Positions 12,512 through 53,409 of a stretch of DNA of 64,000 nt are shown here, in pieces. The number at the start of each line of letters is the position of its first letter. The first letter of the stretch is position 1. Position numbers and translations under genes: made by a program. Where the stretch lies: IMG/VR virus record IMGVR_UViG_3300032562_000004, positions 124,001-188,000 of that record; one strand, written 5' to 3'. Below the pieces are notes generated by a model that saw nothing but the letters and a program-made list of their open reading frames with translations, did not search any database and was not told the DNA's origin.

Positions 12512-12579
12512 AAGCTGGCATTCCTTTACAATGTTAGAGTGTGTGCGGAGGCCAATCCGGCGACATACACTTATTTATA
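12512..12579 (-). promoter_or_regulatory. Late promoter plus 36-nt structured leader of the GIY-YIG gene (copy 1)
   Basis: TATAAATA then AGTGTATGT-CGC-CGGA-TTGGCC-TCCG-C-ACACACTCT. Confidence 0.75.
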
Positions 12580-12602
12580 ATAATTTAATAGTTGAGGACA
12601 TA

Positions 12603-13325
12603 ATGTTACCAAAGATTGATGCACCAGTATATGAATTAGATTTACCTTTATCGAAGAAACATATTCGTTTTCGTCCTTTTTTAGTAAAAGAACAGAAGAA
12701 TTTGATGATGGCATTAGAATCTGATGATAGAGAAACAATTGAAAGAAATATCCGTCAGGTTCTAACTAACTGTACCTTGACCGACAATATTGATGTTGAT
12801 AAGTTACCAGTAATTGATGTTGAGTTTTACTTTATTAACTTACGAGCAAGGTCTGTAGGTGAGGTAGTAGAAAACGAATACATCTGTACCAATGAAGTTG
12901 ATGGTAAAGCCTGTAATAATAAAATGAAAGGCACATTAAACTTATTGGACATTAAAGTTGATGTTGATCCTGATAGAAAAGATACGATTAAAGTAACCGA
13001 TAAGATTTCTATCAAGATGAAATATCCAGAGTTCTCTTTGGTTGATAAGTTAAGTAAGAAAGAATCGGCTGTTGATATTGCTTTTGAAGTAATGGCAGAA
13101 AGTGTTGAATGGATTTTTGATGGTGAACAATATTACTATGCTAATGAAACACCTAAAGAAGAACTCATGCAGTTTATTGAATCTTTGAATCAAGAACAGT
13201 TTGGCAAGTTGGAAGAATTCTTTAGTAATCTTCCAACAATGCACAGAACAATGGAAATGAAATGCGGTAAATGTGGTTTTGAGCATCGTATTGATATGGA
13301 AGGCCTCGAAAGTTTTTTCGGGTAA
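12603..13325 (+). CDS. gp26: Baseplate hub assembly protein gp26 (start at MLPKID)
   Basis: MLPKIDAPVYELDLP.SKK.IRFRPFLVKEQKNL; C-terminal CGKCG...GLESFF. Confidence 0.9.
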   Translation: MLPKIDAPVYELDLPLSKKHIRFRPFLVKEQKNLMMALESDDRETIERNIRQVLTNCTLTDNIDVDKLPVIDVEFYFINLRARSVGEVVENEYICTNEVDGKACNNKMKGTLNLLDIKVDVDPDRKDTIKVTDKISIKMKYPEFSLVDKLSKKESAVDIAFEVMAESVEWIFDGEQYYYANETPKEELMQFIESLNQEQFGKLEEFFSNLPTMHRTMEMKCGKCGFEHRIDMEGLESFFG

Positions 13326-13375
13326 TATTTTGTTATGACAATTTGAGAAATTACTATAAAACTAATTTCTCCTTG

Positions 13376-13516
13376 ATGCAACACCATAAGTATTCTCTCA
13401 CGGAACTTGAAAATATGTTACCGTGGGAGAGGGACATTTACGTGGCTATGCTGATTCAGTATATTGAAGAAGAAAACGAAAAAATAAAACAACAACAGGC
13501 TGCAGCAAGACGATAG
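13376..13516 (+). CDS. gp51: Baseplate hub assembly catalyst gp51 (possibly made as a -1 frameshift extension of gp26)
   Basis: Own translation MQHHKYSLTELENMLPWERDIYVAMLIQYIEEENE; not in the supplied ORF track. Confidence 0.85.
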   Translation: MQHHKYSLTELENMLPWERDIYVAMLIQYIEEENEKIKQQQAAARR

Positions 13517-15181
13517 ATGGATGATAAAAATAATTCGGATTGGAAAAAGGAATGGAAGGATTCAGGATTAGATCCTGATAAACCTGAAGATTTTAAAAAA
13601 ATCCAAAGCATTTACGCCAAGAAAATGGAAACAAAAATTCTTGGAGGGTTGGAAAATAGCCCAGCACAAACCGTTTCAAACATAATCAACAAACTTCATG
13701 GAATTGATAAACAAAAACCATTGGTTGAAGGTAAAGATTATACTATTGCACCTGGTGGTGAAGATGTTGAATTGAGTCAAGAATTTATTGATTCGATGAG
13801 AAAAAGGTCAAAAGAACTCACTAAGACCAAAGGTATGGAAAATATGTTGGGTAACCCAATTATGTCTTCCGTATTTAAAAAGAATCCAAAAAGAAATCAA
13901 AAAAATTCAAAACCGGAAGTAGCAGCTGATACTTCAGTAAATGAAGATAAAGAAAAACTTGCTCCTAAAAAAGATCCATTAATTAACCATGTTGCACCTG
14001 CTTCTGAATCCAAACTAAAGGCAGGAGATTCTGAAGGTGATATTCTAGGTAAAATCTTTAATTTGATGGTAGAAAAATACCACAGAGATGATGCTAATTT
14101 TAAAGAAGAAACCAAATATAAAGAAAAACTCAAAGAAAAAAAAGAAACTCGTTCAAAAGAGTTAATTGATTTATTTACACCAGGTAAAAAGAAACCAGGT
14201 AAAAGAAAGAAAAAAGAAAAAGAAGGTACTGCCGAAAAAGTAGAACCTAAAACTACTGGTACAACTAAAGGTGGAACAACATCAGCAGTAAGAGATACCA
14301 CCAATTCAGTTGTTTCGACTGGAACTAAAGCTGTAGTGGGTGTTGCAGCTGCAGGTGCTGCGGTAGTTGGTGTTGATGCTTTGGCCGCCAAGATAACTAA
14401 AAATGAAGGCGGTGGAAATCCAAATCAAGCAAACATTGTAAAGGGACATTCAGCAAAAGAAGCACAAATTATCAAAGGTAATATAGATGTTACTACAGGT
14501 AAAACTTTTGATAAATCATTAGAAGAAATGACCTTAGGTGAAGCTTATGATTTGGGAACTAGAAGAGGTAAATATTATAATGCTAAAGGTGCTGGTGCCG
14601 CATTAGGTAAGTATGGTTTTATGCCTATTGCGATTGAAGATAGAGGTAGAGCACTTTATGGAAAAGATTGGAGAAATGTTCCGTTTGATTCAAAAACTCA
14701 GGATGAATTAAACAAGTCACTAATTATAACCAATTTACAAAAATTACAAAAAGCAGGAATACCACCATCTGAAAGAAATTTATATTTGATGCACTTTTTT
14801 GGTAATACTGCACAAACTTCAGCATTTTTAAATTCTTCAGATGAAAGTAGTATGGCGCCCATTCTAGATATGTACAATCATGGCGCTACTGCAAATCCGG
14901 ATGTTGCCAAGTTAACTGTTGGCCAATATAAAAAAAGGTTTTTGGCTAAATTTGATGATACTCCCGCTGACTTACAAGTAAAATCAGTAGCACAACCAGT
15001 ATCAAATCCACCTACAACAATTCCAAGTAAAATTCCAGATGGACAATCTTCAAGTGCACCATCTACAACAATAATAAGTAAAACTACCAATGTAATTAAA
15101 GGTGGTACTACATATAGTATAACGGAAGATAATTCTCCTGATACTTCTCCATTAATCGACAGACAATATAATTTAAGATAA
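13517..15181 (+). CDS. Hub/tape-measure-region protein with a lysozyme-like domain
   Basis: ITKNEGGG...EMTLGEA...AALGKYGFMP...FD.KTQDEL segment resembles muramidase AAGKYQF motifs. Confidence 0.55.
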   Translation: MDDKNNSDWKKEWKDSGLDPDKPEDFKKIQSIYAKKMETKILGGLENSPAQTVSNIINKLHGIDKQKPLVEGKDYTIAPGGEDVELSQEFIDSMRKRSKELTKTKGMENMLGNPIMSSVFKKNPKRNQKNSKPEVAADTSVNEDKEKLAPKKDPLINHVAPASESKLKAGDSEGDILGKIFNLMVEKYHRDDANFKEETKYKEKLKEKKETRSKELIDLFTPGKKKPGKRKKKEKEGTAEKVEPKTTGTTKGGTTSAVRDTTNSVVSTGTKAVVGVAAAGAAVVGVDALAAKITKNEGGGNPNQANIVKGHSAKEAQIIKGNIDVTTGKTFDKSLEEMTLGEAYDLGTRRGKYYNAKGAGAALGKYGFMPIAIEDRGRALYGKDWRNVPFDSKTQDELNKSLIITNLQKLQKAGIPPSERNLYLMHFFGNTAQTSAFLNSSDESSMAPILDMYNHGATANPDVAKLTVGQYKKRFLAKFDDTPADLQVKSVAQPVSNPPTTIPSKIPDGQSSSAPSTTIISKTTNVIKGGTTYSITEDNSPDTSPLIDRQYNLR

Positions 15182-15183
15182 AC

Positions 15184-19534: not shown

Positions 19535-19599
19535 ATCTCCTTTTGTTTACGGTCGTTACTCTGACCTTGGACCCAAGTACTTCTGACTTTGTGATAGGG

Positions 19600-19935
19600 T
19601 TTGTGGAACGATTGTTTCTGTTGCCAAGTACAATCGCTGGAAAACTCCGACAGGTGTTTAGGCTGCCAGTGCGTAACTTTCATCGTTAGCGTTTAATTTA
19701 ATTTGCTTCTTCGACCGAGTGTCCTCAATCCTAACGGCTTTCGCTTTGCCGATTCTCCATTGTTCTAATTATTGCCATGTCGAAACCGGTCGCCCACATC
19801 AAAAACATATTAGCTGGTAATACTCACTCCATTAAAAACCTGCCGTTGTGACTGGTTCACTAATATGCTTATGGTGTAGGCGGGGAGAATCGAACTCCCG
19901 TCCACAACAACTTTCAAACAACTTCAACGAATGTG
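19600..19935 (-). ncRNA. ssrA: Circularly permuted (two-piece) tmRNA, tag ANDESYALAA (outer ends approximate)
   Basis: T-arm + CGCCTACACCA (ends 19872), a 74-nt intervening segment, then GTGGGCGACCGGTTTCGAC (G1=19797); G3.U70; tag frame 19690-19658. Confidence 0.92.
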
Positions 19936-20052
19936 TATCAATAATGGTCCTAATCTATAACTAGTATAAACATCGCCATTATTAAATCTAACTTGGCCCC
20001 AATGAAAAATTCCACCACGGTACCAATGTGTCTTATATACTCTAATCTTCAT
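19924..20052 (-). CDS. 42 aa hypothetical protein
   Basis: Own translation MKIRVYKTHWYRGGIFHWGQ...; co-oriented, fills the gap. Confidence 0.35.
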   Translation of the reverse strand: MKIRVYKTHWYRGGIFHWGQVRFNNGDVYTSYRLGPLLIHIR

Positions 20053-27958: not shown

Positions 27959-28033
27959 TATAAATAGGTGTAGGTCACGATGCGCTAACATCTACCTACT
28001 CTATGTTTAACACTTTAACACGAAACACAGCTC
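27959..28033 (+). promoter_or_regulatory. Late promoter plus 36-nt structured leader of the GIY-YIG gene (copy 2)
   Basis: TATAAATA then GGTGTAGGT-CAC-GATG-CGCTAA-CATC-T-ACCTACTCT. Confidence 0.75.
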
Positions 28034-28672
28034 ATGTCAAGTATATATCAACCAAATCTACCATATTGTGTATATCTTACCACATATTTTGGTAACAAAC
28101 TTCCTATGTTTTATCTTGGATCTTCATCGGTTAAGAAGGTACAAAATGGTTATAAAGGTTCAGTATCTTCTAAAAAATACAAACAAATATGGAAAGAAGA
28201 ACTAAAACAAAATCCACAATTATTCAAAACACAAATTATATCGTATTATACAACAAGAATTGAAGCTACTGAAAAAGAAAATCAATTTCAACTTAAATTG
28301 AATGTAGTTAAATCTCCATTGTATATGAACACATCAAATGCAATACCAAATGGCATTTATGGTGTATCAATGAAAGGTGAAAATAATCCTATGTTTGGTA
28401 AAACCAGAAGTATGGCCACCGAAACCAAAATCAAAATAAGCCAAACCAAAAAAGGTGTTGTAAAATCGGAACAAACAAAACAAAAAATGAGAAAACCTAA
28501 ACCGATCGGTTTTAGTGAAAAACTAAAGGGCAATCAAAATGCAAAAGGTGCAAAATCTTGGTTAGGTAAAACTCATAGTGAAGAAACCAAAAAGAAAATC
28601 TCAGATAAAATCAAAGAATTAAACCGGTTAAAAAATCAAGGCTTATCACAATCAGGAACTCTAATTAAATAG
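28034..28672 (+). CDS. GIY-YIG homing endonuclease with NUMOD3 motifs, inverted
   Basis: YCVYLTTY......FYLGSS....GYKGS; ENNPMFGK, GKTHSEETKKKIS. Confidence 0.82.
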   Translation: MSSIYQPNLPYCVYLTTYFGNKLPMFYLGSSSVKKVQNGYKGSVSSKKYKQIWKEELKQNPQLFKTQIISYYTTRIEATEKENQFQLKLNVVKSPLYMNTSNAIPNGIYGVSMKGENNPMFGKTRSMATETKIKISQTKKGVVKSEQTKQKMRKPKPIGFSEKLKGNQNAKGAKSWLGKTHSEETKKKISDKIKELNRLKNQGLSQSGTLIK

Positions 28673-42427: not shown

Positions 42428-42513
42428 TGGTGCCCGGAGCCGGACTCGAACCGGCATGCCTTTTAAAGCGGAAGATTTTAAGTCTTCTATGTATACCATT
42501 TCATCACCCGGGC
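42428..42513 (-). tRNA. tRNA-Leu(TAA)
   Basis: GAAGA-CTTAAAA-TCTTC, long variable arm. Confidence 0.92.
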
Positions 42514-42968: not shown

Positions 42969-43009
42969 AACAGTATTATATAGTAATAATTTATTACTGT
43001 CAAATATTT

Positions 43010-43094
43010 TGGTGGGCAAGGAGAGACTCGAACTCTCACGCCTTGCGGCACTGGCTTCTAAGACCAGCATGGCTACCAATTACATCACTCACCC
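43010..43094 (-). tRNA. tRNA-Leu(TAG)
   Basis: CTGGT-CTTAGAA-GCCAG, long variable arm. Confidence 0.92.
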
Positions 43095-43559
43095 ATTTAC
43101 TACTTTTAAACCTTTTAATCTATCTGCGGCATAACTAGCCGCAAACGCTTGTGGCTTAACTAGTGGCTCTACATTACATACGCCACGGATATAACCAATA
43201 GCTTGACTTACAACATTAGAACTAGCATGAATTTCGTTAGGATTAATATCTAAATGTACTTCTACAGCACGACCTTCTAATACTTCTGCTAATTTTAAAT
43301 ACAATTCACTAACCTTAAACACTTCAGTCATTAATCTAGTATTAGGTTTATCACAACGGTCATAATCTCGTTCTCTAGTCACTTCACCAAATAACTTACA
43401 ACCGTGATTACCGTCAATATGTACAACAATAGCGGCTGTATAGTCAGCATACCATTCTTTGCCACGCTTAATTCGTTCAGAGTCCACACCAATATAAATC
43501 TTAGTGTCTGGACCTTGAGCATCTATAAACTTTTTGATTTGTGGTATGTTAAACTTCAT
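43089..43559 (-). CDS. RNase H-like YkuK/DUF458 family protein (start at MKFNIP)
   Basis: IYIGVDS...RLMTEV...EVHLDIN...KPQAFAASYAAD. Confidence 0.78.
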   Translation of the reverse strand: MKFNIPQIKKFIDAQGPDTKIYIGVDSERIKRGKEWYADYTAAIVVHIDGNHGCKLFGEVTRERDYDRCDKPNTRLMTEVFKVSELYLKLAEVLEGRAVEVHLDINPNEIHASSNVVSQAIGYIRGVCNVEPLVKPQAFAASYAADRLKGLKVVNG

Positions 43560-43580
43560 TATTCTCTTTCTTAAGTTATT

Positions 43581-43654
43581 TGGCGTCCCGGCAGGGATTC
43601 GAACCCCGACCAACAGTTTTGGAGACTGCGATGCTACCGTTACACTACCAAGAC
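43581..43654 (-). tRNA. tRNA-Trp(CCA)
   Basis: Loop CTCCAAA. Confidence 0.92.
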
Positions 43655-43674
43655 GTTGTACTACTATTTAATGT

Positions 43675-43751
43675 TGGTGCCTCAACCTAGACTCGAACTA
43701 GGGACCCTTGCGTTATCAACACAATGCTCTAACCAACTGAGCTATTGAGGC
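43675..43751 (-). tRNA. tRNA-Ile(GAT)
   Basis: Loop TTGATAA. Confidence 0.92.
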
Positions 43752-43752
43752 A

Positions 43753-43829
43753 TGGTGGGTCTTGAGAGACTCGAACTCCCAACCGCTAGTTTCGAAGACT
43801 AGAACTCTAATCCATTGAGCTAAAGACCC
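43753..43829 (-). tRNA. tRNA-Arg(TCG)
   Basis: CTAGT-CTTCGAA-ACTAG. Confidence 0.92.
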
Positions 43830-43834
43830 ATGTT

Positions 43835-43929
43835 TGGTAGTAGATATAGGTTATGATCCTATCCGTTGCAGCCCATCTGACCACTCTCCCAGGTTTATAA
43901 AACCCGGCCGCACACCAGTGCTATCTACC
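43835..43929 (-). tRNA. Atypical 95-nt tRNA, anticodon TAT (reads Ile AUA)
   Basis: 7-bp acceptor + ACCA; 4-nt D-loop; loop TTTATAA; long variable arm; T-loop ATCATAA. Confidence 0.7.
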
Positions 43930-43939
43930 ATATTGTTAT

Positions 43940-44026
43940 TGGCGGAAAGTATTGGAGTCGAACCAATCCACCCATTGCTGAATGACAGATTAGCAATCTG
44001 TTGCCTTGCCGCTCGGCCAACTTTCC
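43940..44026 (-). tRNA. tRNA-Ser(GCT)
   Basis: Loop TTGCTAA, G73, long variable arm. Confidence 0.92.
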
Positions 44027-44035
44027 TTAATTGTT

Positions 44036-44130
44036 TGGCGGAAGACAGAGGAGTCGAACCCCACCCGGCTCTTCACCAGGACCTGGTTTTCAAGGCCAGT
44101 CGCAGGACCATCCCCGCTGCATTATCTTCC
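44036..44130 (-). tRNA. tRNA-Ser(TGA) with enlarged D-arm
   Basis: Loop CTTGAAA, G73, long variable arm. Confidence 0.85.
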
Positions 44131-44136
44131 ATATTG

Positions 44137-44212
44137 TGGCTCCCCGAGCTGGGCTCGAACCAGCGACACCGTGATTAACAGTCACGTACTCTACCAACTG
44201 AGCTATCAGGGA
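44137..44212 (-). tRNA. tRNA-Asn(GTT)
   Basis: Loop CTGTTAA. Confidence 0.93.
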
Positions 44213-44220
44213 ATTGTTTT

Positions 44221-44298
44221 TGGTCTGTGAGGTAGGATTCGAACCTACAGCCTCCTGACTCCAGATCAGGCCGTCTACCAGATTGACATTACACACAG
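44221..44298 (-). tRNA. tRNA-Pro(TGG), non-canonical C33
   Basis: CCTGA-TCTGGAG-TCAGG; C1-G72, A73. Confidence 0.8.
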
Positions 44299-44306
44299 AT
44301 TGTTAC

Positions 44307-44381
44307 TGGTGCCCCAGAATGGAATCGAACCACCGAACCCGGCTTACAAGACCGGACCTTTACCACTAAGGATACAAGGGC
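44307..44381 (-). tRNA. tRNA-Thr(TGT)
   Basis: CCGGT-CTTGTAA-GCCGG. Confidence 0.9.
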
Positions 44382-44764
44382 TATTTTCTGTCTCTACCAT
44401 TTCCTTTATTTTTAGCCTTATATGTAGGCGTCTGACTATGGCAGTTTGGGCATATTGCCCTTAAATTTTCTTCTTTGTTATTTTTATAATTCCCGTCGAT
44501 ATGATCTAATTCTAGATATAGCGGAAGACCATTATGTTCTTCGATACCACAAATAAGACATTTATTATTTTGTTTTGCCCTTATATAACGATGTATATAC
44601 ATACTAGTTTGATGTTTGCCTCGAAGGCCATCTTCTAAACCAGACTTCCACCGTTCTATGTAACTTTGATGCATTCCTTCTAAGTAATGCTTGCCACAAT
44701 AGATTCTTTTTTCTTTATGTGTAAATACCGTAGAACATATTTTACAGCTATATTTTTGTAACAT
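44381..44764 (-). CDS. HNH endonuclease
   Basis: CLICG...LELDHIDGNYKNNKEENLRAICPNCHSQTPTY. Confidence 0.88.
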   Translation of the reverse strand: MLQKYSCKICSTVFTHKEKRIYCGKHYLEGMHQSYIERWKSGLEDGLRGKHQTSMYIHRYIRAKQNNKCLICGIEEHNGLPLYLELDHIDGNYKNNKEENLRAICPNCHSQTPTYKAKNKGNGRDRK

Positions 44765-44780
44765 ATAATCTTTCTTTAAC

Positions 44781-44857
44781 TGGCACTCTGTAGGGGTGAC
44801 GATCCCCTCTTACCAACGTGAAAGGCTGGGGTCCTAACCAACATAGACGAACAGAGT
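44781..44857 (-). tRNA. tRNA-Glu(TTC)
   Basis: Loop CTTTCAC; T-loop ATCGTCA. Confidence 0.85.
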
Positions 44858-44863
44858 ATAACT

Positions 44864-44941
44864 TGGCGTCCTCACCGGGTGTCGATCCCGGTCCTACACC
44901 TTGAAAGGGTGTTGATCTAGCCAATCGTAATCTATGAGGAC
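44864..44941 (-). tRNA. tRNA-Glu(TTC), second copy
   Basis: ACACC-CTTTCAA-GGTGT; T-loop ATCGACA. Confidence 0.85.
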
Positions 44942-44947
44942 ATAACT

Positions 44948-45022
44948 TGGCGACTCCAGGGAGTAACGATCTCCCTCTTCCTCTTAGACAGAGAGGTGTG
45001 CGTCCATGAACACTTTGGAGCC
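44948..45022 (-). tRNA. tRNA-Asp(GTC)
   Basis: CCTCT-CTGTCTA-AGAGG; T-loop ATCGTTA. Confidence 0.85.
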
Positions 45023-45027
45023 TTTGT

Positions 45028-45101
45028 TGGTTGCGGGCTAGGGTAACGCTCCCTATTCCATCCTGGCTTATGAGACCGGAGTGTGGCTATCACAACCCGC
45101 A
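45028..45101 (-). tRNA. Initiator-like tRNA-Met(CAT) with short D-arm
   Basis: GCGGG acceptor, loop CTCATAA, T-loop AGCGTTA. Confidence 0.7.
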
Positions 45102-45109
45102 ATAGTTGT

Positions 45110-45187
45110 TGGAGGAACGGGTCGGATTCGAACCGACGACTTTACAGTTTTGCAGACTGTTGCTTTGGGCCACTCAGCCACCGTTCC
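45110..45187 (-). tRNA. tRNA-Cys(GCA)
   Basis: Loop CTGCAAA, U73. Confidence 0.92.
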
Positions 45188-45196
45188 GTTATTGTT

Positions 45197-45281
45197 TGGT
45201 GGGTGGTCATGGAGTCGAACCAAGTATGCCAGAGGCGTCTGATTTACAGTCAGGTGCGGTCGCCAGTGCCGCTCACCACCC
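45197..45281 (-). tRNA. tRNA-Tyr(GTA)
   Basis: Loop CTGTAAA, long variable arm. Confidence 0.92.
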
Positions 45282-45285
45282 ATAT

Positions 45286-45505
45286 AACGCTCTCTTTAGA
45301 AAGCGTGTAATAAAGCATACTAAGGCAATCATTTTTGCGCTGTGGAAAAGCGCCATGTCTTCGATCCGCGATGCCATTGACGGACCAGGTCTTTTAGTAT
45401 GCTTTATTACGCTGTAGTTTTTTGCTCCACAAAAGGAGTTTCATCGTACAGGCCGCCCGTTTACTAGATGTTTTAAGTGCCTAGCGTGGACCTCGTTCCC
45501 ACATA
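45286..45505 (-). ncRNA. Structured leader of the tRNA array with a perfect 16-bp helix
   Basis: TAATAAAGCATACTAA / TTAGTATGCTTTATTA plus flanking hairpins. Confidence 0.5.
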
Positions 45506-45509
45506 ACAC

Positions 45510-45538
45510 ACTATACTACCTTACTGTTTATTTGTCAA
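45510..45538 (-). promoter_or_regulatory. Sigma70-type promoter proximal to the tRNA array
   Basis: TTGACA-17 nt-TATAGT. Confidence 0.75.
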
Positions 45539-45720
45539 TCTTCTATTTGAAAATAAACAGCTTCTTTACGCTGCGAAGCAAGTAATACCTTTGCTCGCTC
45601 GATCTTATTCTGAATCAACTTCTGCTTTTGCTCATCACTGAGTGAATAACTATAAGCCTGTTCCACAATACGATCATTTAATTTACTATAATCTATTGTC
45701 ATCTTTCTTTCCTTTTAAAA

Positions 45721-45752
45721 ACAAAAAACCCGGAGTGTTTAGTTCCGGGTCC
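45721..45752 (-). terminator. Intrinsic terminator (candidate attenuator)
   Basis: GGACCCGGA-ACTAAACAC-TCCGGGTTT then TTTGT. Confidence 0.85.
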
Positions 45753-45779
45753 TTAAAGTTTGTGATATTAAAATATTAC

Positions 45780-45941
45780 TTAATCATCATATCCTTCTTG
45801 GACCCTACTATAATCTTTCCCTGCCTCAATCATATTAAAGCCACTATTATGAATTGTTGAGCGTAAAGAGGCTACCGGGCTCCAGCAGAGTGCTGAACCT
45901 TGTGCTATTTGATACGTTACGGACAATCTTGTATTTTTCAT
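45780..45941 (-). CDS. 53 aa candidate leader peptide containing all 20 amino acids
   Basis: Own translation MKNTRLSVTYQIAQGSALCWSPVASLRSTIHNSGFNMIEAGKDYSRVQEGYDD; ATG lies 9 nt after the -10 box. Confidence 0.6.
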   Translation of the reverse strand: MKNTRLSVTYQIAQGSALCWSPVASLRSTIHNSGFNMIEAGKDYSRVQEGYDD

Positions 45942-45950
45942 AATATGTTT

Positions 45951-45979
45951 ATTATAATGCTTAATTAATTCTTTGTCAA
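45951..45979 (-). promoter_or_regulatory. Consensus sigma70 promoter of the leader peptide
   Basis: TTGACA-17 nt-TATAAT. Confidence 0.85.
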
Positions 45980-46067
45980 CCTTCTTTTTTACTTCTCTGA
46001 ACTTTTATTTACCTAATGTTGCAATTATACGCATATTTCCATTGAAAGTCAACCACTTTTGGTAAAA

Positions 46068-46322
46068 TTAGTTGCCCCATCTTAAAAGGAAGAGTGATGA
46101 GTCGGTATCGCGAACAAAACTTACACCACATAAGTGTGGTTGATCCAATGTCCACATGGTCCAAGTCCAGTGTATGTAATGTCTACCTACTGTTGTTTCA
46201 AGCCAATATTCCATAGTATCCACTGCGGCGATCCAATCTAAATTTCCATTGGTTTCTATTATTGGCCAAGGCGCTACAGCTCTATAAGGAAGTTCAGGAT
46301 GTTTGTCCCAAAGTGCTCGCAT
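46068..46322 (-). CDS. Hypothetical Trp-rich protein
   Basis: Ends FLLRWG. Confidence 0.55.
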   Translation of the reverse strand: MRALWDKHPELPYRAVAPWPIIETNGNLDWIAAVDTMEYWLETTVGRHYIHWTWTMWTLDQPHLCGVSFVRDTDSSLFLLRWGN

Positions 46323-46360
46323 AGAAGTATTTACGAGCCCAGAACTTTCATTATATGCTA

Positions 46361-46975
46361 TTAATTGATTAGATCTTCTATAGATTTTTCGAACCCCACT
46401 GTAATTACTAATCTCGGTCCTGGGCTCAAATGTACGGTATGCACATAGTCTGTGCGTACAAATGCGCTAGGAGTTAGTAAATTTGATTCTGCAGCCGTAG
46501 CAGGGCCTAAATATTCCATTTTTTCTGCTACTGTTGTTCCTGGCATAGTTAGCCCAGTAAAAGGTAATCCAGTTCGAGTACTTACTTGAGTAATCGAGTA
46601 TAGTCTTTTATCAGTATGATGAAAATCGGTCCACCAATGCATAGGATCTTCTGGATTACCTTTTATTAATATATTAAATCTACTTTTTAAAATTTTATGG
46701 TTTTCGTTATCCACATGGGGTCTTCCATAACCTTGATTTTCTAAATTAGCTAAATGTGCGGTTATGATTAGATTGGATGTATCACAATTATATTGCGACA
46801 AATAATTTAATAATTCTTGTCCAGCACTTACTTCACGCCATTCGTGCTGTAACTTTCTTTGATCCCAATCTAAATTATGATAAAAATTTTCATTAAAATG
46901 ATTTTTATATCGATTAAGTATCCAATCTTTAGCTTCCTGCGAAAAATCAAAATCTGTTTTATGGAATAGTAACAT
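46361..46975 (-). CDS. 2OG-Fe(II) oxygenase-like protein, tandem paralogue 2
   Basis: RPHVD (HxD), SAFVRTDYVHTV, PRLVITV. Confidence 0.6.
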   Translation of the reverse strand: MLLFHKTDFDFSQEAKDWILNRYKNHFNENFYHNLDWDQRKLQHEWREVSAGQELLNYLSQYNCDTSNLIITAHLANLENQGYGRPHVDNENHKILKSRFNILIKGNPEDPMHWWTDFHHTDKRLYSITQVSTRTGLPFTGLTMPGTTVAEKMEYLGPATAAESNLLTPSAFVRTDYVHTVHLSPGPRLVITVGFEKSIEDLIN

Positions 46976-47606
46976 TGATTAACTCTTCTATACTTTTATC
47001 GAAAGGCACAGTAATTACCAATCTTGGTCCAGGACTTAATTTTATAGTATGAATATAATCTGTGCGTACAAATGCGCTAGGAGTTAGTAAATTTGATGCT
47101 GTATCTGTAGCAGGACCTAGATACTCCATTTTTTCTTCATTAGTGTGTCCTGGCATAGATAAACTACTAAATTCTTGATTAGTACGTGTATTTAAAACAT
47201 TACTATAGTACAAGCGTTTATCTGTATGGTGAAAGTTAGTCCACCAAAGCATAGGATCTTCTGGATTACCAAGCACTATTATATTAAATTTTGAAGTTAC
47301 TGTTATTTTACCTTTAGCAGGTCCGTATAATTGTTCGGCGTCAACGTGCGGGCGACTATAATATGGTATTGTTAAATTTGCCAGATGAGCAGTTATGATC
47401 AGATTAGATGTATCGCAATTATATTGAGAAAGGTAAGACAATAATTCTTCTCCAGCAATAGATGCTCGCCATTCATGTTGTAGTTGATTTTGAATCCAAT
47501 CATAATTATGATAGAAATTTAATTTGAAGTGATCTTTATATCGGTTAAGTAACCAATCTTTAGCTTCTTGTGAGAAATCAAAATTTGTTTTATGATATAA
47601 CAGCAT
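46959..47606 (-). CDS. 2OG-Fe(II) oxygenase-like protein, tandem paralogue 1
   Basis: RPHVD, SAFVRTDYIHTI; shares long identical blocks with its neighbour. Confidence 0.6.
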   Translation of the reverse strand: MLLYHKTNFDFSQEAKDWLLNRYKDHFKLNFYHNYDWIQNQLQHEWRASIAGEELLSYLSQYNCDTSNLIITAHLANLTIPYYSRPHVDAEQLYGPAKGKITVTSKFNIIVLGNPEDPMLWWTNFHHTDKRLYYSNVLNTRTNQEFSSLSMPGHTNEEKMEYLGPATDTASNLLTPSAFVRTDYIHTIKLSPGPRLVITVPFDKSIEELINVTIP

Positions 47607-48106
47607 TATAATTTCCTACTAGTATTATCAAATTCTATCATAGTGACTCTTTTATTATCTAAAAAATATTTAATACCGTTAATAACTTGATTAACATCAA
47701 TGACTGTACGACCTAATTCAACGCACCTAGCATTATTTTCAAGAAAACCTGGTATCAACAATAAACATCTTTCTGGATAAAATGGTTTATGATATTGATA
47801 TGTTTCGTGTATTATTTTTTTATTAACTTGATATGGATTGGTGCTATAGTATCCAGCAATACTTCCAATAGTAATTAAAGTTACTTTTGAATCTTTTAAA
47901 TCTTTTATGATATTTGCTTGTATAGTACCTGAATAGGCATTATTGAATACTATGTCCGCTGATTTCATTATAGACAAGCACTCGTCGTACTTTGTAGTTA
48001 AATCGTATCCGTTACTACGACTTAACCCGATAACTTCTTCATTGGGGAATAATTCAACTATTTTGCTTCCTACTAAACCAGTATGTCCAGTGATTACTAT
48101 CTTCAT
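47606..48106 (-). CDS. Truncated Rossmann-fold (SDR-like) protein
   Basis: MKIVITGHTGLVGSKI...GLSRSNGYDL...VFNNAY. Confidence 0.7.
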   Translation of the reverse strand: MKIVITGHTGLVGSKIVELFPNEEVIGLSRSNGYDLTTKYDECLSIMKSADIVFNNAYSGTIQANIIKDLKDSKVTLITIGSIAGYYSTNPYQVNKKIIHETYQYHKPFYPERCLLLIPGFLENNARCVELGRTVIDVNQVINGIKYFLDNKRVTMIEFDNTSRKL

Positions 48107-48121
48107 TCTATATTTACCAAC

Positions 48122-48146
48122 AAAAAAAGGACCCGAAGGCCCTTTT
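48122..48146 (-). terminator. Intrinsic terminator with UUCG loop
   Basis: AAGGGCC-TTCG-GGTCCTT-TTTTT. Confidence 0.85.
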
Positions 48147-48163
48147 AGTTTAACTCGTAAAAA

Positions 48164-48616
48164 TTAGAACGAGTACTTAACACCTGCGGTTACGATGTTG
48201 CCATTGTAAGCCTTAGTAATGTTATTACCTTTTTGGTAGGCATAATCAGCTACCAAATTTACATTCTTAACTACAGGATAGGCAATCCCTGCGCCAATAA
48301 ATCCAGCACCACCATTACCTACGCCAGGTTTTTGTGTGTCAATAAATGCAGCTCCAGCACGAACATTAGTTTGTACGGGACCTAGTTTGATAACGTCATA
48401 ACTCACAGATGCTGTGTAACGATTAACATCAACAGCATTGGTAGTACTACGATCAAAAGTTCCTTGAACGCCAATTGCGCCAAATGATTGACCAACAGAA
48501 ACGCCTGCGGTATCTTGTTTAGAGCCCATGTTGCGGCCACCAAAAACACCAACGTCAGTTGCGAAAGCAAAAGTAGTTGATGCTAATAATGCTACTGCTA
48601 AAATTACTTTTTTCAT
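48164..48616 (-). CDS. Small outer-membrane beta-barrel protein (OmpA/Lom-like)
   Basis: Signal peptide, amphipathic strands, C-terminal GVKYSF. Confidence 0.8.
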   Translation of the reverse strand: MKKVILAVALLASTTFAFATDVGVFGGRNMGSKQDTAGVSVGQSFGAIGVQGTFDRSTTNAVDVNRYTASVSYDVIKLGPVQTNVRAGAAFIDTQKPGVGNGGAGFIGAGIAYPVVKNVNLVADYAYQKGNNITKAYNGNIVTAGVKYSF

Positions 48617-48736
48617 ACTAATAGTTCCTTTATGTTTATACTACTGAACAAATATTTATTGTTTTTTTGCGTTGGCCTGCAAAAATTGCTAGGTTTTGGC
48701 ATATTTTTAAGTTTAATATACGCATATAATGAAGTC

Positions 48737-48764
48737 AAAAGAATAGGGGTCGAAGCCCCTATCT
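48737..48764 (-). terminator. Terminator at the end of the tmRNA coding piece
   Basis: ATAGGGGC-TTCG-ACCCCTAT-TCTTTT. Confidence 0.8.
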
Positions 48765-49097
48765 GTTATTTTCTGTTTCGACGGATAACTCCGCAAAGCA
48801 GTGATTAAACTGCTAATGTTTGGCGTTGTGCTGTACGAGCAGAGAAACGAATTCCCTTACCTGAAACAGTTACTTCGCCTTTAGATGCGTTTGCATTTAA
48901 GTTTTTCGCTTGATTTACAGTCATCGCCTACTGTGTTGCCTCTTTCATTATCTCACCATGTCGAAACCTTGTCATCCCCACTGAAACATACTACAGCTTT
49001 TGGCCTCGCTACCGATAACTCGGTTCGGTAATATGCTTCGGTGGAGATGCCGGGAATCGAACCCGGGTCCACAGCGCCTTCACTACGAAGGAATTAC
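48765..49097 (-). ncRNA. ssrA: Second circularly permuted tmRNA, 29-aa tag ANASKGEVTVSGKGIRFSARTAQRQTLAV (outer ends approximate)
   Basis: GGACCCGGGTTCGATTCCCGGCATCTCCACC, an intervening segment, then GGGGATGACAAGGTTTCGAC (G1=48979); G3.U70; tag frame 48894-48805. Confidence 0.9.
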
Positions 49098-49106
49098 AAC
49101 AATTCT

Positions 49107-49310
49107 TTACAGCGGAAGAATATTTGATGCTTGCTTGCCTTTAGGGCCTGCCACTACATCGAATGTTACCGCTTGATTCTCTTTTAAACTCTTAAAACCA
49201 TTTGTGCTAATTGCGGAAAAATGTGCAAACAATTCCTCACCACCAGCATCGGGGGTAATAAATCCAAACCCTTTTGCATCATTAAACCACTTTACTTTAC
49301 CTGTTGCCAT
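49107..49310 (-). CDS. cspA: Cold-shock protein
   Basis: [18 protein letters not shown]...FAHFSAI...[10 protein letters not shown]. Confidence 0.95.
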
Positions 49311-49338
49311 GTTACTTTACTTCCTTTATTAAAAACTA

Positions 49339-49554
49339 TTATACTACTATTTTACCTATTTTGTCAACCAATTTGATATAAACAAGCGTAGCGTGATACT
49401 TAATATATCTAACCACTCTAAAACTCAAATGAGCATTAGTAGGTATATTTAGTATTGATCGGTTCCGAATTGCTGGCAATGGACCACAACCTAATCTGCT
49501 CCACTCTTCTTCAGAGTAATAATACTGTTCAACTGGTTTTTTGTTCTGTTCCAT
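49339..49554 (-). CDS. Hypothetical protein
   Basis: YYYSEEEWSRLGCGPLP; TAAATA upstream. Confidence 0.45.
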   Translation of the reverse strand: MEQNKKPVEQYYYSEEEWSRLGCGPLPAIRNRSILNIPTNAHLSFRVVRYIKYHATLVYIKLVDKIGKIVV

Positions 49555-49596
49555 AAATCTATTTAGTACTGGTAGGCCTTGTTACTTAAAGACATT

Positions 49597-49672
49597 TGGT
49601 GGTCCGGGTAGGACTTGCACCCACACTCCCCGAATTATGAGTTCGACGCTTTACTTTTTAAGCTACCGGGCC
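49597..49672 (-). tRNA. tRNA anticodon CAT, Ile2-like body
   Basis: GGCCC acceptor, loop CTCATAA, A73. Confidence 0.82.
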
Positions 49673-51586: not shown

Positions 51587-52203
51587 ACTTTTTCCTTTTT
51601 CTTTAATTGTGCGTTGCGTCTTGCTTCGGACCAAGGCTTACCTTTATGCTGTGATCCATAAATCTTTTTTCTCTCTTCTTCTGTAAGAGAACTTCTATGT
51701 TGTAATGCCTTTTCTTGCATCACTACTTTTGTATCTTCTGAATGTTCTTTATCTCTAAACGGATTATTTTCCTTCATCCATTCTCTGTGTTTTTCTTTTC
51801 TTCTCTTTGCTTCTTCTTTATCCTGTTGTATCTCTTCGTAAGTCTTGCCTTTGTTTTTACCTGGCTTACCTCTGCTGGCATTGCCTATTTTAGTTTTTGC
51901 TTCTTCGGTATGACTAAACGGACCACCATCGCCTGCTTCTGGTTTTAAGTTAGCCCACTCTGGACTATCTACTACCTGCCATAAGTCACTGTAGTACAGG
52001 CCCCAGGCTCTTATTTCTTCATTATCTTTACACTCTTTTAATATTTCTGTATCAACATCATTGCCGTGTTTCTCGATATGAGCTGACCAACGCTTACCAG
52101 AACCTTTGTAAGTGTACGGATCTTGATTAGTCTTACCTAAATATTTTAATCCGGTTTTACGATGAGTTTTAATGTACAAGTAAATCATATTGTACTTAGT
52201 CAT
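51583..52203 (-). CDS. GIY-YIG homing endonuclease with NUMOD3 repeats
   Basis: IYLYIKTHRKTGLKYLGKT..DPYTYKGSG. Confidence 0.88.
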   Translation of the reverse strand: MTKYNMIYLYIKTHRKTGLKYLGKTNQDPYTYKGSGKRWSAHIEKHGNDVDTEILKECKDNEEIRAWGLYYSDLWQVVDSPEWANLKPEAGDGGPFSHTEEAKTKIGNASRGKPGKNKGKTYEEIQQDKEEAKRRKEKHREWMKENNPFRDKEHSEDTKVVMQEKALQHRSSLTEEERKKIYGSQHKGKPWSEARRNAQLKKKEKV

Positions 52204-52393
52204 CGTAAAGGGTTAGTCATTTATTTCTCTTGTATCTTTTTCACTTCTATACAAGCCCATCCCGATGCTGATTTAACAAGTACTCCATCATTCATTTCGC
52301 ATTGGTTAGCTCTTTGTATTTGCTGATAAATCAAAAAAGGAACGGATAACAATATCAATAAAAGTATTGGCGGCCAAATTTTTTCAATTAAAT

Positions 52394-52843
52394 TCATTTA
52401 GGTAGTGCCTCTTCTTTAGTTTGAAATGGACCCTCGTAAGGGTAGCGTTGTAATACAATTAATTTAGGATCTTGCATAGCCGCCCAATGACGACCTTTCT
52501 TGACTGTGTACCAACCAGCCGCATACCAAGATTTACTTTTCTTTGTTTTAGTGTAAACTGGTAGCTTTTGTGGAACGTCCCACATAGGATTATATACACG
52601 ACCTGCTGCCGGAAAGCCATGTACTATATTGGTTGTTTTCTTTTTCTCAGGTTTAATAATAGCTTCAAAAGTAACATTGATATTTCGTTCAACTAATTTA
52701 ATACTTTTGTATTGTGCTACTACTTGATTATTAATCTTAACTTGATAGCCGCCATCGCAGGCTTCAATGTTCCCTACTTTATTATTATTTTCTTGTAAAA
52801 TCCAAAACTGTTTATCTATTACGGGTTTAGCTACTAGACTCAT
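52394..52843 (-). CDS. Hypothetical phage protein
   Basis: LPVYTKTKKSKSWYAAGWY...QRYPYEGPF. Confidence 0.6.
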   Translation of the reverse strand: MSLVAKPVIDKQFWILQENNNKVGNIEACDGGYQVKINNQVVAQYKSIKLVERNINVTFEAIIKPEKKKTTNIVHGFPAAGRVYNPMWDVPQKLPVYTKTKKSKSWYAAGWYTVKKGRHWAAMQDPKLIVLQRYPYEGPFQTKEEALPK

Positions 52844-53040
52844 TTAGTCATCCTTTTTCTACATTGTTCTTTTACTGCTACAGGATAGTCGGGACTAATC
52901 TCTGCGATACCACAATCATACTTTACTGTTACATGGCGTACATCTGCGGGCCAAAATGCTAAGGCTAATATAGTTAACAATACAGCAAATGTTACCGTAG
53001 TCCAAAACATATCTTTAGCCATATTATTCTTCAACTCCAA
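52840..53040 (-). CDS. Small membrane protein
   Basis: TM helix; YDCGIAEISPDYP. Confidence 0.55.
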   Translation of the reverse strand: MELKNNMAKDMFWTTVTFAVLLTILALAFWPADVRHVTVKYDCGIAEISPDYPVAVKEQCRKRMTK

Positions 53041-53290
53041 AATGTTCTTTAATTACTCTGCCTACACCTAGAGTAATACCTTCGGCTTCTGAATTATGGT
53101 CATTGGCAACTTCGGCACATTCCTGAACAATCAACTCGGCGAACTTGGCTAAATCGTCGTGCGACATATTGCCATCGCTTAGATTATTATCAGTGATACC
53201 AGCCTGTTCAGCAAGTTGTTTAATCTTCTCGTTCATTGCTTTAATTCCCAAATTTAATTGTATGCTACTATTGTAACAGAATTTAACCAT
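53024..53290 (-). CDS. MNE...FAELIV.ECA...EHFGVEE family (copy C)
   Basis: Same motifs as 36283-36492. Confidence 0.65.
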   Translation of the reverse strand: MVKFCYNSSIQLNLGIKAMNEKIKQLAEQAGITDNNLSDGNMSHDDLAKFAELIVQECAEVANDHNSEAEGITLGVGRVIKEHFGVEE

Positions 53291-53342
53291 ACGGTCAACT
53301 ATTTTGGTAACCTAATAAAATTAACGAAAGATAAATATGAAC

Positions 53343-53409
53343 TAAATAAGTGTAGTTCGCGATCCTGGCAGATCCAACTACTCTAACAGTTAAAAAGGAA
53401 CTATTAGCA
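53343..53409 (+). promoter_or_regulatory. TAAATA promoter plus 36-nt structured leader of the GIY-YIG gene (copy 3)
   Basis: AGTGTAGTT-CGC-GATC-CTGGCA-GATC-C-AACTACTCT. Confidence 0.75.

What the first reader, a model, noticed from the sequence alone, without database searches (positions are those of the whole stretch)
12512..53409. Covarying 36-nt RNA leader on all three inverted GIY-YIG endonuclease genes
Copies lie at 12536-12571 (-), 27967-28002 (+) and 53349-53384 (+). Each follows a TAAATA box, is exactly 36 nt, and has a 9-bp outer stem with a conserved U.U, a 3-nt CRC bulge, a 4-bp inner stem and a 6-nt loop. The inner stem changes with compensation: CGGA/TCCG, GATG/CATC, GATC/GATC. 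A second hairpin closed by CT...AG precedes the ATG and holds the AAGG SD in copies 1 and 3. The co-oriented GIY-YIG genes (50362, 51583) lack it. It occurs in both halves, so it appears to travel with the endonuclease cassette. Possible roles (inference): translational control, autoregulatory binding site, antisense-strand terminator, or an endonuclease-associated RNA. T4 I-TevI has a late promoter plus RBS hairpin, but I do not recognise this motif.
Basis: partly seen in the sequence, partly recalled or inferred. Interest (0 to 1): 0.75.

Follow-up and report, generated by a model that had tools for sequence, protein, structure and literature searches.

The report
Homing-endonuclease leader module with antisense RNA
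The three hairpins are real copies of a roughly 90-bp regulatory module that homing-endonuclease genes carry in more than a hundred uncultured T4-like phage contigs, and its conserved folds fit the opposite strand best, so it most likely encodes a small antisense RNA that restrains the nuclease gene.

Summary
All three copies sit at the stated coordinates (±1 nt), each after a T4-type late box and before a homing-endonuclease gene (HEG). The element is larger and more widespread than reported.

- **Extent:** late box, bulged hairpin HP1, hairpin HP2 carrying the SD, CAGC, a 5-nt spacer holding the ATG, then TATTTA.
- **Spread:** 7 copies in this 236-kb genome, a degenerate orphan at 49372-49456, and at least 120 IMG/VR contigs. 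It precedes unrelated nucleases (several GIY-YIG types, HNH, HNH_3). Rfam has no match.
- **Covariation:** 98.5% of cells paired, 16 of 19 pairs with double changes, 0 of 500 shuffles as good.
- **Strand:** wobbles are one-sided, with 194 G·U against 12 A·C on the antisense reading. HP2 forms only there.
- **Second promoter:** TATTTA keeps its distance from CAGC in all three reading frames. On the other strand it is ATAAATA, five nt before GCUG. The genome encodes a gp55 homologue.
- **Terminator:** antisense HP1 is followed by a U-tract.

Best reading (inferred, not shown): convergent late promoters produce the HEG mRNA and a ~70-nt antisense RNA covering its 5' UTR, like IS10 RNA-OUT. The "inverted genes only" rule fails elsewhere.

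The parts
12572..12579 (-). Copy 1: sense late-promoter box TATAAATA. Its complement forms the U-tract after antisense HP1.
12535..12570 (-). Copy 1: HP1, the bulged 36-nt hairpin GTGTATGT/CGC/CGGA-loop-TCCG/C/ACACACTCTA.
12514..12536 (-). Copy 1: HP2 region with the SD (AAGGAA) and CAGC. It is an 8-bp helix only on the + (antisense) strand.
12499..12506 (+). Copy 1: convergent antisense late box, a perfect TATAAATA, inside codons 2-4 of the HEG.
12512..12579 (+). Copy 1: predicted ~68-nt antisense RNA with two hairpins and a U-tail; -19.3 kcal/mol, z = -2.2.
11882..12511 (-). Copy 1: GIY-YIG-type homing endonuclease gene ([14 protein letters not shown] class), 209 aa.
27959..27966 (+). Copy 2: sense late box TATAAATA.
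27968..28003 (+). Copy 2: HP1.
28002..28031 (+). Copy 2: longer HP2 variant ending in CAGC (MSSIY subclass).
28012..28040 (-). Copy 2: sigma-70-like antisense promoter TTGACA-17-TAAAGT. In this subclass it takes the place of the antisense late box.
28034..28672 (+). Copy 2: homing endonuclease gene, 212 aa, with NUMOD3.
53343..53348 (+). Copy 3: sense late box (C)TAAATA.
53350..53385 (+). Copy 3: HP1.
53384..53408 (+). Copy 3: HP2 region with the SD (AAGGAA) and TAGC. It is a 9-bp helix on the - (antisense) strand.
53415..53421 (-). Copy 3: convergent antisense late box GTAAATA, inside codons 2-4 of the HEG.
53341..53409 (-). Copy 3: predicted ~69-nt antisense RNA; -18.5 kcal/mol, z = -2.6.
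53410..54150 (+). Copy 3: GIY-YIG-type homing endonuclease gene (YTLYIKTH..LKYLGQT class), 246 aa.
49372..49456 (+). Degenerate orphan copy of the module with a decayed box and no SD, ATG or HEG.

Best explanation
The hairpins belong to a mobile regulatory module of about 90 bp that homing-endonuclease genes of a large group of uncultured T4-like (Kyanoviridae-related) phages carry at their 5' end. The module holds two T4-type late promoter boxes that face each other about 75 bp apart.

The first box drives the HEG mRNA. Its predicted start falls at or inside the 5' arm of HP1.

The second box lies in HEG codons 2-4. It should start an RNA at the G of GCUG, one nt before HP2'. That RNA runs back through the whole 5' UTR, folds into two hairpins (HP2', HP1') and ends in the U-tract formed by the complement of the first box. 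The result would be an antisense RNA of about 70 nt, fully complementary to the SD, the start codon and the 5' end of the HEG mRNA.

By analogy with IS10 RNA-OUT, IS200 art200 and SymR, this RNA would keep nuclease synthesis low through pairing, occlusion of the ribosome site, duplex cleavage and promoter interference. The variable inner hairpin may make each copy specific for its own mRNA.

Shown: the conservation, the covariation, the strand bias, the fixed position of the second box, the U-tract, the gp55 homologue and the association with unrelated nucleases.

Inferred: that both boxes fire, that the RNA terminates there, and that it represses.
For: The model gives 111 hits, 103 of them distinct, in 100 loci.

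**Covariation.** 98.5% of cells are paired and 16 of 19 pairs show changes on both sides. No shuffle of 500 does as well, and the slid controls pair only 31-51%. An unfitted MAFFT alignment gives 12 of 19 compensatory pairs.

**Strand.**
- The same helices are 98.5% canonical read as antisense and 89.2% read as sense, with 194 G.U against 12 A.C.
- In HP2, position 1 is A.C in 96 of 96 sequences; position 2 has 15 A.C and no G.T; position 3 has 36 C.A and no T.G.
- The HP1 bulge pair is G-C in 55, A-T in 13, A.C in 14 and G.T in none.
- Alifold gives -18.0 for antisense and -12.7 for sense, and predicts no HP2 for sense.
- The predicted antisense RNAs have z = -2.2, -2.6 and -3.2. The sense late UTRs have z = +1.2, +0.6 and +0.3.

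**Second box.**
- The antisense heptamer ATAAATA is conserved at 73-99% per position, and G at the predicted +1 is present in 98 of 103.
- The CAGC-to-ATG distance (4, 5 or 6 nt) and the ATG-to-ATTTA distance (6, 5 or 4 nt) compensate to a constant 10, so the motif is conserved in all three reading frames.
- TATTTA follows 81% of modules against 1.5% of all ORF starts in the genome.
- HEGs of the same protein class that lack the module do not have it.
- The box is kept in co-oriented cassettes (18 of 19) as well as inverted ones (33 of 43).

**Late transcription.** The genome has a gp55 homologue (43% identity, E = 7e-26). ATAAATA is rare, at 53 sites, and 24 of them lie 5-60 nt upstream of a gene start on the same strand against 5 on the opposite strand. 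The box-to-start geometry follows PMC2988020.

**U-tract.** There are 5-7 U in the 8 nt after antisense HP1 in 101 of 103 sequences.

**Precedents.** An antisense RNA, CfrI, opposes a HEG in the T4-like cyanophage S-PM2 (PMC2984593). IS10 and IS200 have antisense RNAs opposite the transposase 5' UTR, and the Sib RNAs show cognate specificity (PMC5006887, PMC4513863, PMC2943612).
Against: - There are no transcript data, so neither promoter, neither start site nor the termination has been observed.
- The U-tract is forced by the sense box and so is not independent evidence.
- The base of HP1' is AU-rich and sits 2 nt from the U-tract. A simple terminator scan does not call it, so termination may be leaky.
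- About a fifth of modules lack the antisense late box, among them the whole MSSIY subclass that includes window copy 2. That subclass has a sigma-70-like TTGACA-17-TAAAGT instead.
- In copies 1 and 3 the box-to-GCUG spacing is 7 and 6 nt rather than the family's usual 5.
- HP1 can fold on both strands, so a sense role for it is not excluded.
- The invariant U.U (A.A on the other strand) mismatch and the invariant bulged bases are unexplained.
- The strand asymmetry could equally reflect a single-stranded DNA hairpin.
- The A2 alignment was fitted to the model.
Confidence: 0.45

Rival explanations
1. Sense-strand 5' leader. HP1 sits at the very 5' end of the late HEG mRNA and protects it from 5'-end-dependent decay, or HP1 and HP2 tune translation as in I-TevI, mobE and segB. 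On this view the antisense features are by-products.
For: With the commonest 3-nt spacer (81 of 116 contexts) the predicted late start falls on the first paired base of the HP1 core. Most HP1 pairs are Watson-Crick and so fold on either strand. The SD lies in the loop and 3' arm of HP2. Late promoter plus hairpin is the established pattern for HEGs of T4-type phages (PMC2988022; PMC2677866).
Against: HP2 does not form on the sense strand, where an invariant A.C and further A.C/C.A mismatches appear with no G.U at all. HP1 does not contain the SD. The predicted sense UTRs of the window copies fold no better than shuffles. This view does not explain the frame-independent TATTTA at a fixed distance from CAGC.
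Confidence: 0.2
2. Insulator for opposite-strand transcription. The antisense hairpins plus the U-tract stop or attenuate host-strand transcripts that read through an inverted HEG. The inner box only supplies a promoter for the neighbouring gene, and no regulatory antisense RNA is involved.
For: Inverted cassettes are the majority, 45 against 21. In all three window copies a gene on the other strand starts 20-50 nt beyond the U-tract. In T4, promoters for neighbouring genes are known to be embedded in HEGs (PMC2988022). PeSL stem-loops act as terminators (PMC2839356).
Against: The antisense box is at least as well kept in co-oriented cassettes (18 of 19), where it points into the 3' end of the upstream gene. 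A strong terminator placed between a promoter and the gene it is meant to serve is contradictory. HP2' has no role in this model, yet it covaries strongly.
Confidence: 0.15
3. DNA-level element. The module would be a conserved linker for homologous recombination that shuffles HEG cassettes (like PeSLs), or a single-stranded DNA hairpin or cruciform recognised during replication or recombination.
For: The same module precedes unrelated nuclease genes. L052 and L053 share the upstream flank and HP1 but diverge from HP2 onward. The inner loop occurs in both orientations, a DNA-level hairpin inversion. The length of about 90 bp is close to that of PeSLs.
Against: Recombination needs sequence identity rather than a compensated variable stem. 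The one-sided wobble pattern requires a specific single strand to fold. The promoter-like spacing of both boxes and the U-tract suit transcription better.
Confidence: 0.12
4. Operator for autorepression by the endonuclease itself, as with I-TevI.
For: The element overlaps the late promoter, as the I-TevI operator does (PMC2988022).
Against: An identical conserved sequence lies in front of GIY-YIG, HNH and HNH_3 enzymes, which have different DNA-binding modules and presumably different targets. What varies between copies is a compensated stem, not a recognition sequence.
Confidence: 0.03

Closest known systems
IS10 RNA-IN/RNA-OUT, IS200 art200 and SymR/SymE (cis-antisense RNAs opposite the 5' UTR of a mobile-element or toxin nuclease gene)
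   Same: Face-to-face promoters. A short, stably folded antisense RNA covers the SD and start codon of a potentially harmful DNA-cutting enzyme carried by a selfish element. The antisense promoter sits just inside the ORF (PMC5006887, PMC4513863; SymR from my own knowledge).
   Different: Both promoters here are T4-type late boxes read by gp55 polymerase. The host is a lytic phage. The RNA has two hairpins, and its terminator U-tract is the complement of the sense promoter. None of this has been shown experimentally.
Late promoter plus regulatory hairpin of I-TevI, I-TevII, I-TevIII, segB and Aeh1 mobE
   Same: A TATAAATA box lies immediately upstream of a HEG, a hairpin lies between the box and the ATG, and the predicted late start falls within the 5' arm (PMC2988022).
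   Different: In those systems the hairpin sequesters the RBS on early or middle read-through transcripts of the sense strand. Here HP1 does not contain the SD, the SD hairpin is stable only on the other strand, most cassettes are inverted so there is no upstream read-through, and a second convergent box is present.
Hairpins with TATAAATA and two complementary conserved motifs upstream of free-standing HEGs in GOS 'fractured gene' loci (Dassa et al. 2009, PMC2677866)
   Same: Metagenomic T4-like context, a late box, and a conserved hairpin whose two arms are conserved motifs, found before GIY-YIG and other HEGs. It may be the same motif.
   Different: Their figure and supplement are not held, so identity could not be checked. 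They read it as a sense-strand translational hairpin. No antisense reading, second box or covariation analysis is reported in the text available. None of the co-oriented cassettes examined here showed an obvious split-intein context (neighbouring ORF ends inspected by eye, no domain search).
PeSL/PmSL mobile regulatory cassettes of T4-type phages
   Same: Conserved composite of about 100 bp made of promoter, stem-loop, SD and start codon. It is repeated through the genome and associated with variable genes (PMC2839356, PMC4122927).
   Different: PeSLs use sigma-70-like early (or Mot middle) promoters, flank ORFans and terminate in the sense direction. This module uses late boxes, is tied to HEGs, has convergent boxes and shows antisense-biased structure.
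CfrI antisense RNA of cyanophage S-PM2
   Same: An experimentally detected antisense RNA opposite a homing endonuclease gene in a T4-like phage of the same broad group (PMC2984593).
   Different: CfrI is about 225 nt and bridges psbA and the HEG. The covariance model finds no copy of this module in S-PM2.

Membership tests
T4-type late promoter | TATAAATA-like box about one helical turn upstream of the start site, with AT-rich DNA just downstream | tested here: met
   Sense boxes are GATAAATA (41), TATAAATA (34), ACTAAATA (15) and others, followed by a 1- or 3-nt, mostly A, spacer. The antisense ATAAATA is 73-99% conserved per position, 5 nt before GCUG.
T4-type late promoter | The phage encodes the late sigma factor gp55 | tested here: met
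   G000:81324-81815(-) is 43% identical to T4 gp55, E = 7e-26.
T4-type late promoter | Mapped late transcript 5' end | not testable with these tools
   No transcript data are available.
I-TevI/mobE-type RBS-sequestering hairpin | A stable sense-strand hairpin that includes the SD | tested here: not met
   HP1 ends about 12 nt before the SD. Sense HP2 is 3-4 bp flanked by A.C mismatches, and alifold predicts no HP2 on the sense strand.
I-TevI/mobE-type RBS-sequestering hairpin | Late start inside the hairpin, so that late transcripts lack the 5' arm | tested here: inconclusive
   By spacing, +1 falls at position 3 or 5 of the HP1 5' arm. It has not been mapped.
Intrinsic terminator (antisense strand) | A hairpin immediately followed by a U-tract | tested here: inconclusive
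   There are 5-7 U in the next 8 nt in 101 of 103 sequences. However, the stem is bulged, AU-rich at its base and 2 nt from the U-tract, and the simple scan does not call it.
Cis-antisense regulatory RNA (RNA-OUT/art200/SymR type) | A promoter on the opposite strand inside or near the 5' end of the target ORF | tested here: met
   By sequence only: a frame-independent box at a fixed distance from the structure.
Cis-antisense regulatory RNA (RNA-OUT/art200/SymR type) | Conserved secondary structure of the antisense transcript | tested here: met
Cis-antisense regulatory RNA (RNA-OUT/art200/SymR type) | A detectable antisense transcript that represses the target | not testable with these tools
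   Needs RNA-seq, a Northern blot or reporter assays.
PeSL | Sigma-70-like early promoter (-35 and -10) | tested here: not met
   The module has a late box and no -35/-10 on the sense strand.
Any Rfam 15 family | A match at the gathering score or at E <= 1 | tested here: not met
   No hit at any copy.

The most novel reading that the evidence does not exclude
A previously unrecognised, widespread class of phage cis-antisense RNAs. Homing-endonuclease cassettes of aquatic T4-like phages would carry a portable control unit made of two convergent late promoters. Its ~70-nt two-hairpin antisense RNA silences the nuclease mRNA, and its variable inner hairpin gives each copy its own specificity. This would be the homing-endonuclease counterpart of IS10 RNA-OUT or of type I antitoxins, shared by unrelated nuclease families.
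Probability: 0.4. Interest if true: 0.8.

Novelty: new variant of a known kind. Interest (0 to 1): 0.68.

Why it matters
How free-standing homing endonucleases are kept harmless to their phage is understood for only a handful of T4 and Aeh1 genes. Here one compact module is shared by GIY-YIG and HNH genes in a very large uncultured phage group. It has some of the clearest covariation one can expect from a short element, and it points to a different control logic: a built-in antisense RNA made from a second late promoter.

If confirmed, three things follow. It would add a new RNA family to the databases. It would show that selfish nuclease genes exchange a common regulatory head. It would also supply a ready sequence marker (late box, GTGTAG...CTACTCTA, CAGC, N5, TATTTA) for finding HEG cassettes and late promoters in metagenomic phage contigs.

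Tried and rejected
- Megablast and blastn of the region and of the module against 50,697 phage records gave no match. tblastn with one structural ORF also gave none.
- Rfam at gathering score on the window and at E <= 1 on four loci gave nothing at the module.
- The covariance model found nothing in HTVC008M, S-PM2, Melnitz-3 or S-SCSM2R. Two 19-bit hits in a marine single-cell virus were inspected and rejected.
- The simple promoter and terminator scan did not call HP1 on either strand, because it requires an unbulged stem.
- The TAAATAAGTGTA at window 58117 has no module behind it and is a chance match.
- The idea that M-x-I-Y/TATTTA is a protein feature was rejected. The motif occurs in three reading frames, and HEGs of the same protein class that lack the module do not have it.
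- The idea that the antisense box serves only the neighbouring host gene was rejected as the sole role, because the box is kept in co-oriented cassettes.
- A link to split-intein 'fractured genes' was looked for among the co-oriented cassettes, by eye on the ends of the neighbouring ORFs, and not seen. The Dassa 2009 motif sequence could not be read.
- A YUNR-loop argument and a within-genome test of inner-hairpin diversity were considered and dropped as inconclusive.
- The exact cassette boundary at copy 3 could not be fixed, because the region after the exonuclease gene is hypervariable.

Full report
**1. The observation**

The three copies lie at 12535-12570(-), 27968-28003(+) and 53350-53385(+). 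Each follows a T4-type late box (TATAAATA, TATAAATA, CTAAATA) by one nucleotide. Copy 1 has an extra A.C mismatch in the outer stem. Each copy is followed 25-32 nt later by the ATG of a homing endonuclease gene (HEG) that PHROGs files under homing endonuclease and, for two of the three, Pfam under NUMOD3. A covariance model built later scores the copies at 78, 78 and 60 bits. It finds nothing in front of the two co-oriented GIY-YIG genes, and it finds one decayed, HEG-less copy at 49372-49456.

**2. The element is a large family**

The window is part of a 235.8-kb IMG/VR virus record (36% GC), which holds seven copies. That gave 116 distinct contexts and 83 distinct HP1 sequences. The model recovers 111 copies, 103 of them distinct, in the first 100 loci, including copies the strict pattern missed.

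Rfam has no match at gathering score or at E <= 1. Blast against 50,697 phage isolates finds nothing. The model also finds nothing in the closest cultured relatives by gp55: Melnitz 67%, HTVC008M 63% and S-PM2 55% identical, all Kyanoviridae. Nine further hits lie in MAG contigs, several of them from freshwater bins.

**3. Anatomy of the module**

The order of parts is as follows.
- A late box [G/T/C]ATAAATA or CTAAATA.
- A spacer of 3 nt (81 contexts) or 1 nt (27 contexts).
- HP1: GTGTAGKT, CRC, a 4-5 bp inner stem of at least a dozen compensated sequence types, a loop, one nt, then AMCTACTCTA.
- HP2, with the SD AAGGAG or AAGGAA in its loop and 3' arm.
- CAGC.
- Five nt that contain the ATG.
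- TATTTA.

The ATG floats. The CAGC-to-ATG distance is 4, 5 or 6 nt while the ATG-to-ATTTA distance is 6, 5 or 4 nt, so CAGC-to-ATTTA stays at 10. TATTTA is therefore conserved as nucleotides in all three reading frames, giving N-termini M-x-I-Y, M-Y-L or M-I-F-I. It follows 81% of modules but only 1.5% of ORF starts in this genome. The co-oriented HEGs of the same protein class that lack the module begin MSKPF and MTKYN.

**4. What follows the module**

At least seven unrelated or distant nuclease classes follow it. Among them are three or more GIY-YIG types (PF01541, SegE_GIY-YIG), a classical HNH (PF01844) and HNH_3 (PF13392). The module is therefore a shared regulatory head rather than part of one gene family, and it cannot be an operator for one DNA-binding specificity.

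At the copy-3 site, 78 of 80 related contigs (exonuclease 74-90% identical) lack both the HEG and the module. Homology to the HEG-less alleles resumes right after the insertion.

Orientation relative to the neighbouring genes is inverted in 45 cases, co-oriented in 21 and mixed in 10, in a crude count. In this genome two of the seven copies run with the main strand.

**5. Which strand folds**

The covariation is very strong. On the fitted alignment, 98.5% of cells are paired, 16 of 19 pairs show changes on both sides, no shuffle of 500 reaches the observed value, and the slid controls pair only 31-51%. On an unfitted MAFFT alignment, 12 of 19 pairs are compensated.

The wobble pairs are one-sided. 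Read as antisense RNA, the helices contain 194 G.U and 12 A.C. Read as sense they are only 89% canonical. The detail supports this:
- In HP2, position 1 is A.C on the sense strand in 96 of 96 sequences.
- Positions 2 and 3 of HP2 pass between Watson-Crick states only through A.C or C.A (15 and 36 cases), never through G.U.
- The HP1 bulge pair is G-C in 55, A-T in 13, A.C in 14 and G.T in none.

Alifold gives -18.0 kcal/mol for the antisense alignment and -12.7 for the sense alignment, where it predicts no HP2 at all. For the window copies, the predicted antisense RNAs fold at z = -2.2, -2.6 and -3.2. The predicted late sense UTRs fold at z = +1.2, +0.6 and +0.3.

**6. A second, convergent late box**

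On the antisense strand TATTTA reads ATAAATA. It is conserved at 73-99% per position, as well as the sense box. It is followed by five nt and then G (98 of 103), C, U, G, where HP2' begins. This matches the geometry of T4 late promoters: an 8-bp TATA box about one helical turn upstream of the start site (PMC2988020).

The genome encodes a gp55 homologue. ATAAATA occurs only 53 times in the genome and is concentrated 20-39 nt upstream of gene starts on the coding strand.

After HP1' come 5-7 U in the next 8 nt, the complement of the sense box. The box is retained in co-oriented cassettes (18 of 19), so it is not there only to serve a neighbouring gene.

**7. Mechanism proposed**

Two late promoters face each other about 75 bp apart. 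They would produce the HEG mRNA and an antisense RNA of about 70 nt with two hairpins and a U-tail, complementary to the whole 5' UTR, the SD and the AUG. By analogy with IS10 RNA-OUT, IS200 art200 and SymR (PMC5006887, PMC4513863; SymR from my own knowledge), this RNA would limit translation of the nuclease and expose the duplex to cleavage. Convergent transcription would add promoter interference.

The variable inner hairpin differs among all seven copies in this genome. It could give cognate specificity, as in the Sib RNAs (PMC2943612), but this was not testable statistically. An antisense RNA opposite a HEG has been detected in the related cyanophage S-PM2 (CfrI; PMC2984593).

Everything from 'both promoters fire' onward is inference.

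**8. Caveats**

- There are no transcript data.
- The U-tract is forced by the sense box.
- HP1' is a weak-looking terminator, bulged and with an AU-rich base, and the simple scan does not call it.
- About one fifth of modules lack the antisense late box. That includes the MSSIY subclass to which window copy 2 belongs, which instead carries a conserved antisense TTGACA-17-TAAAGT.
- HP1 can also fold on the mRNA. With the 3-nt spacer it would sit exactly at the 5' end, so a stabilising sense role is not excluded.
- The invariant U.U/A.A mismatch and the invariant bulged bases remain unexplained.
- A single-stranded DNA hairpin would give the same strand bias.
- The inner loop occurs in both orientations (TTGGCG and CGCCAA). 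This shows DNA-level hairpin inversions, and it means some apparent compensation may arise from template switching rather than from stepwise selection.

**9. Comparison with the known, and novelty**

The general theme of a late promoter plus a hairpin before HEGs of T4-type phages is established (PMC2988022). Dassa et al. 2009 reported a conserved hairpin with TATAAATA and two complementary motifs before metagenomic free-standing HEGs (PMC2677866). That may be this motif, but I could not read their figure. PeSLs are analogous mobile promoter/stem-loop cassettes built on early promoters (PMC2839356, PMC4122927).

What appears new is the full extent of the module, its size as a family, its sharing among unrelated nucleases, the antisense-biased structure and the second convergent late box.

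I file it as a new variant of a known kind. Interest is 0.68.

Noticed in passing
window 19567-19966(-) and 48714-49131(-): The phage carries two permuted (two-piece type) tmRNA genes. One has the tag ANDESYALAA and the other an unusually long tag. Rfam matches them to the permuted, alpha- and beta-proteobacterial tmRNA models.
   Followed up: partly
window 38960-49672(-): A cluster of 26 tRNA genes covering most amino acids lies in a region of higher GC (about 0.38-0.43).
   Followed up: no
window 49372-49456(+): A degenerate orphan copy of the module (34.8 bits, E = 9e-6) sits between a tmRNA and a tRNA gene. Its box is decayed and it has no SD, ATG or HEG, so it is probably the scar of a lost cassette.
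   Followed up: yes
window 28012-28040(-); also genome 48032 copy, L018, L067, L078, L088, L091: The MSSIY subclass of the module lacks the antisense late box. It has instead a conserved sigma-70-like TTGACA-17-TAAAGT on the antisense strand, overlapping the start codon, and a longer HP2.
   Followed up: partly
HP1 inner loops across L005-L124: The same inner hairpin occurs in both orientations (for example GGAA-TTGGCG-TTCC and GGAA-CGCCAA-TTCC). These are small inversions of the loop between the inverted repeats.
   Followed up: partly
window 51587-52393 and 53023-54138: Both segments are insertions relative to the closest HEG-less relatives (L136, L139). The first is the module-less co-oriented GIY-YIG gene. 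The second holds the module-bearing HEG plus a small divergent ORF (53024-53290), an accessory gene of unknown function.
   Followed up: partly
L049:127-1903; L052 and L053: In L049 the module sits directly upstream of a 558-aa terminase-like ORF with no HEG between them. L052 and L053 share the upstream flank and HP1 but differ from HP2 onward, as if recombined between the two hairpins.
   Followed up: no
G000:202840-202875(-) (= L015, L120): This genome copy has an intact box and HP1, but only a 16-codon remnant follows (MNRWHFENC..., resembling the C-terminal part of the L050 protein). It is a deletion derivative of a cassette.
   Followed up: partly
L214-L222: The strict pattern also occurs on nine contigs assigned to MAGs, several from freshwater bins (Haliscomenobacter, Mucilaginibacter, Luteolibacter from Lake Mendota, Terrimicrobiaceae). 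They are probably phage contigs binned with bacteria. The one in Mycoplasmopsis may be a chance match.
   Followed up: no
window 58117-58128(+): TAAATAAGTGTA occurs once more, inside a minus-strand ORF, with no hairpin behind it. It is a chance match.
   Followed up: yes
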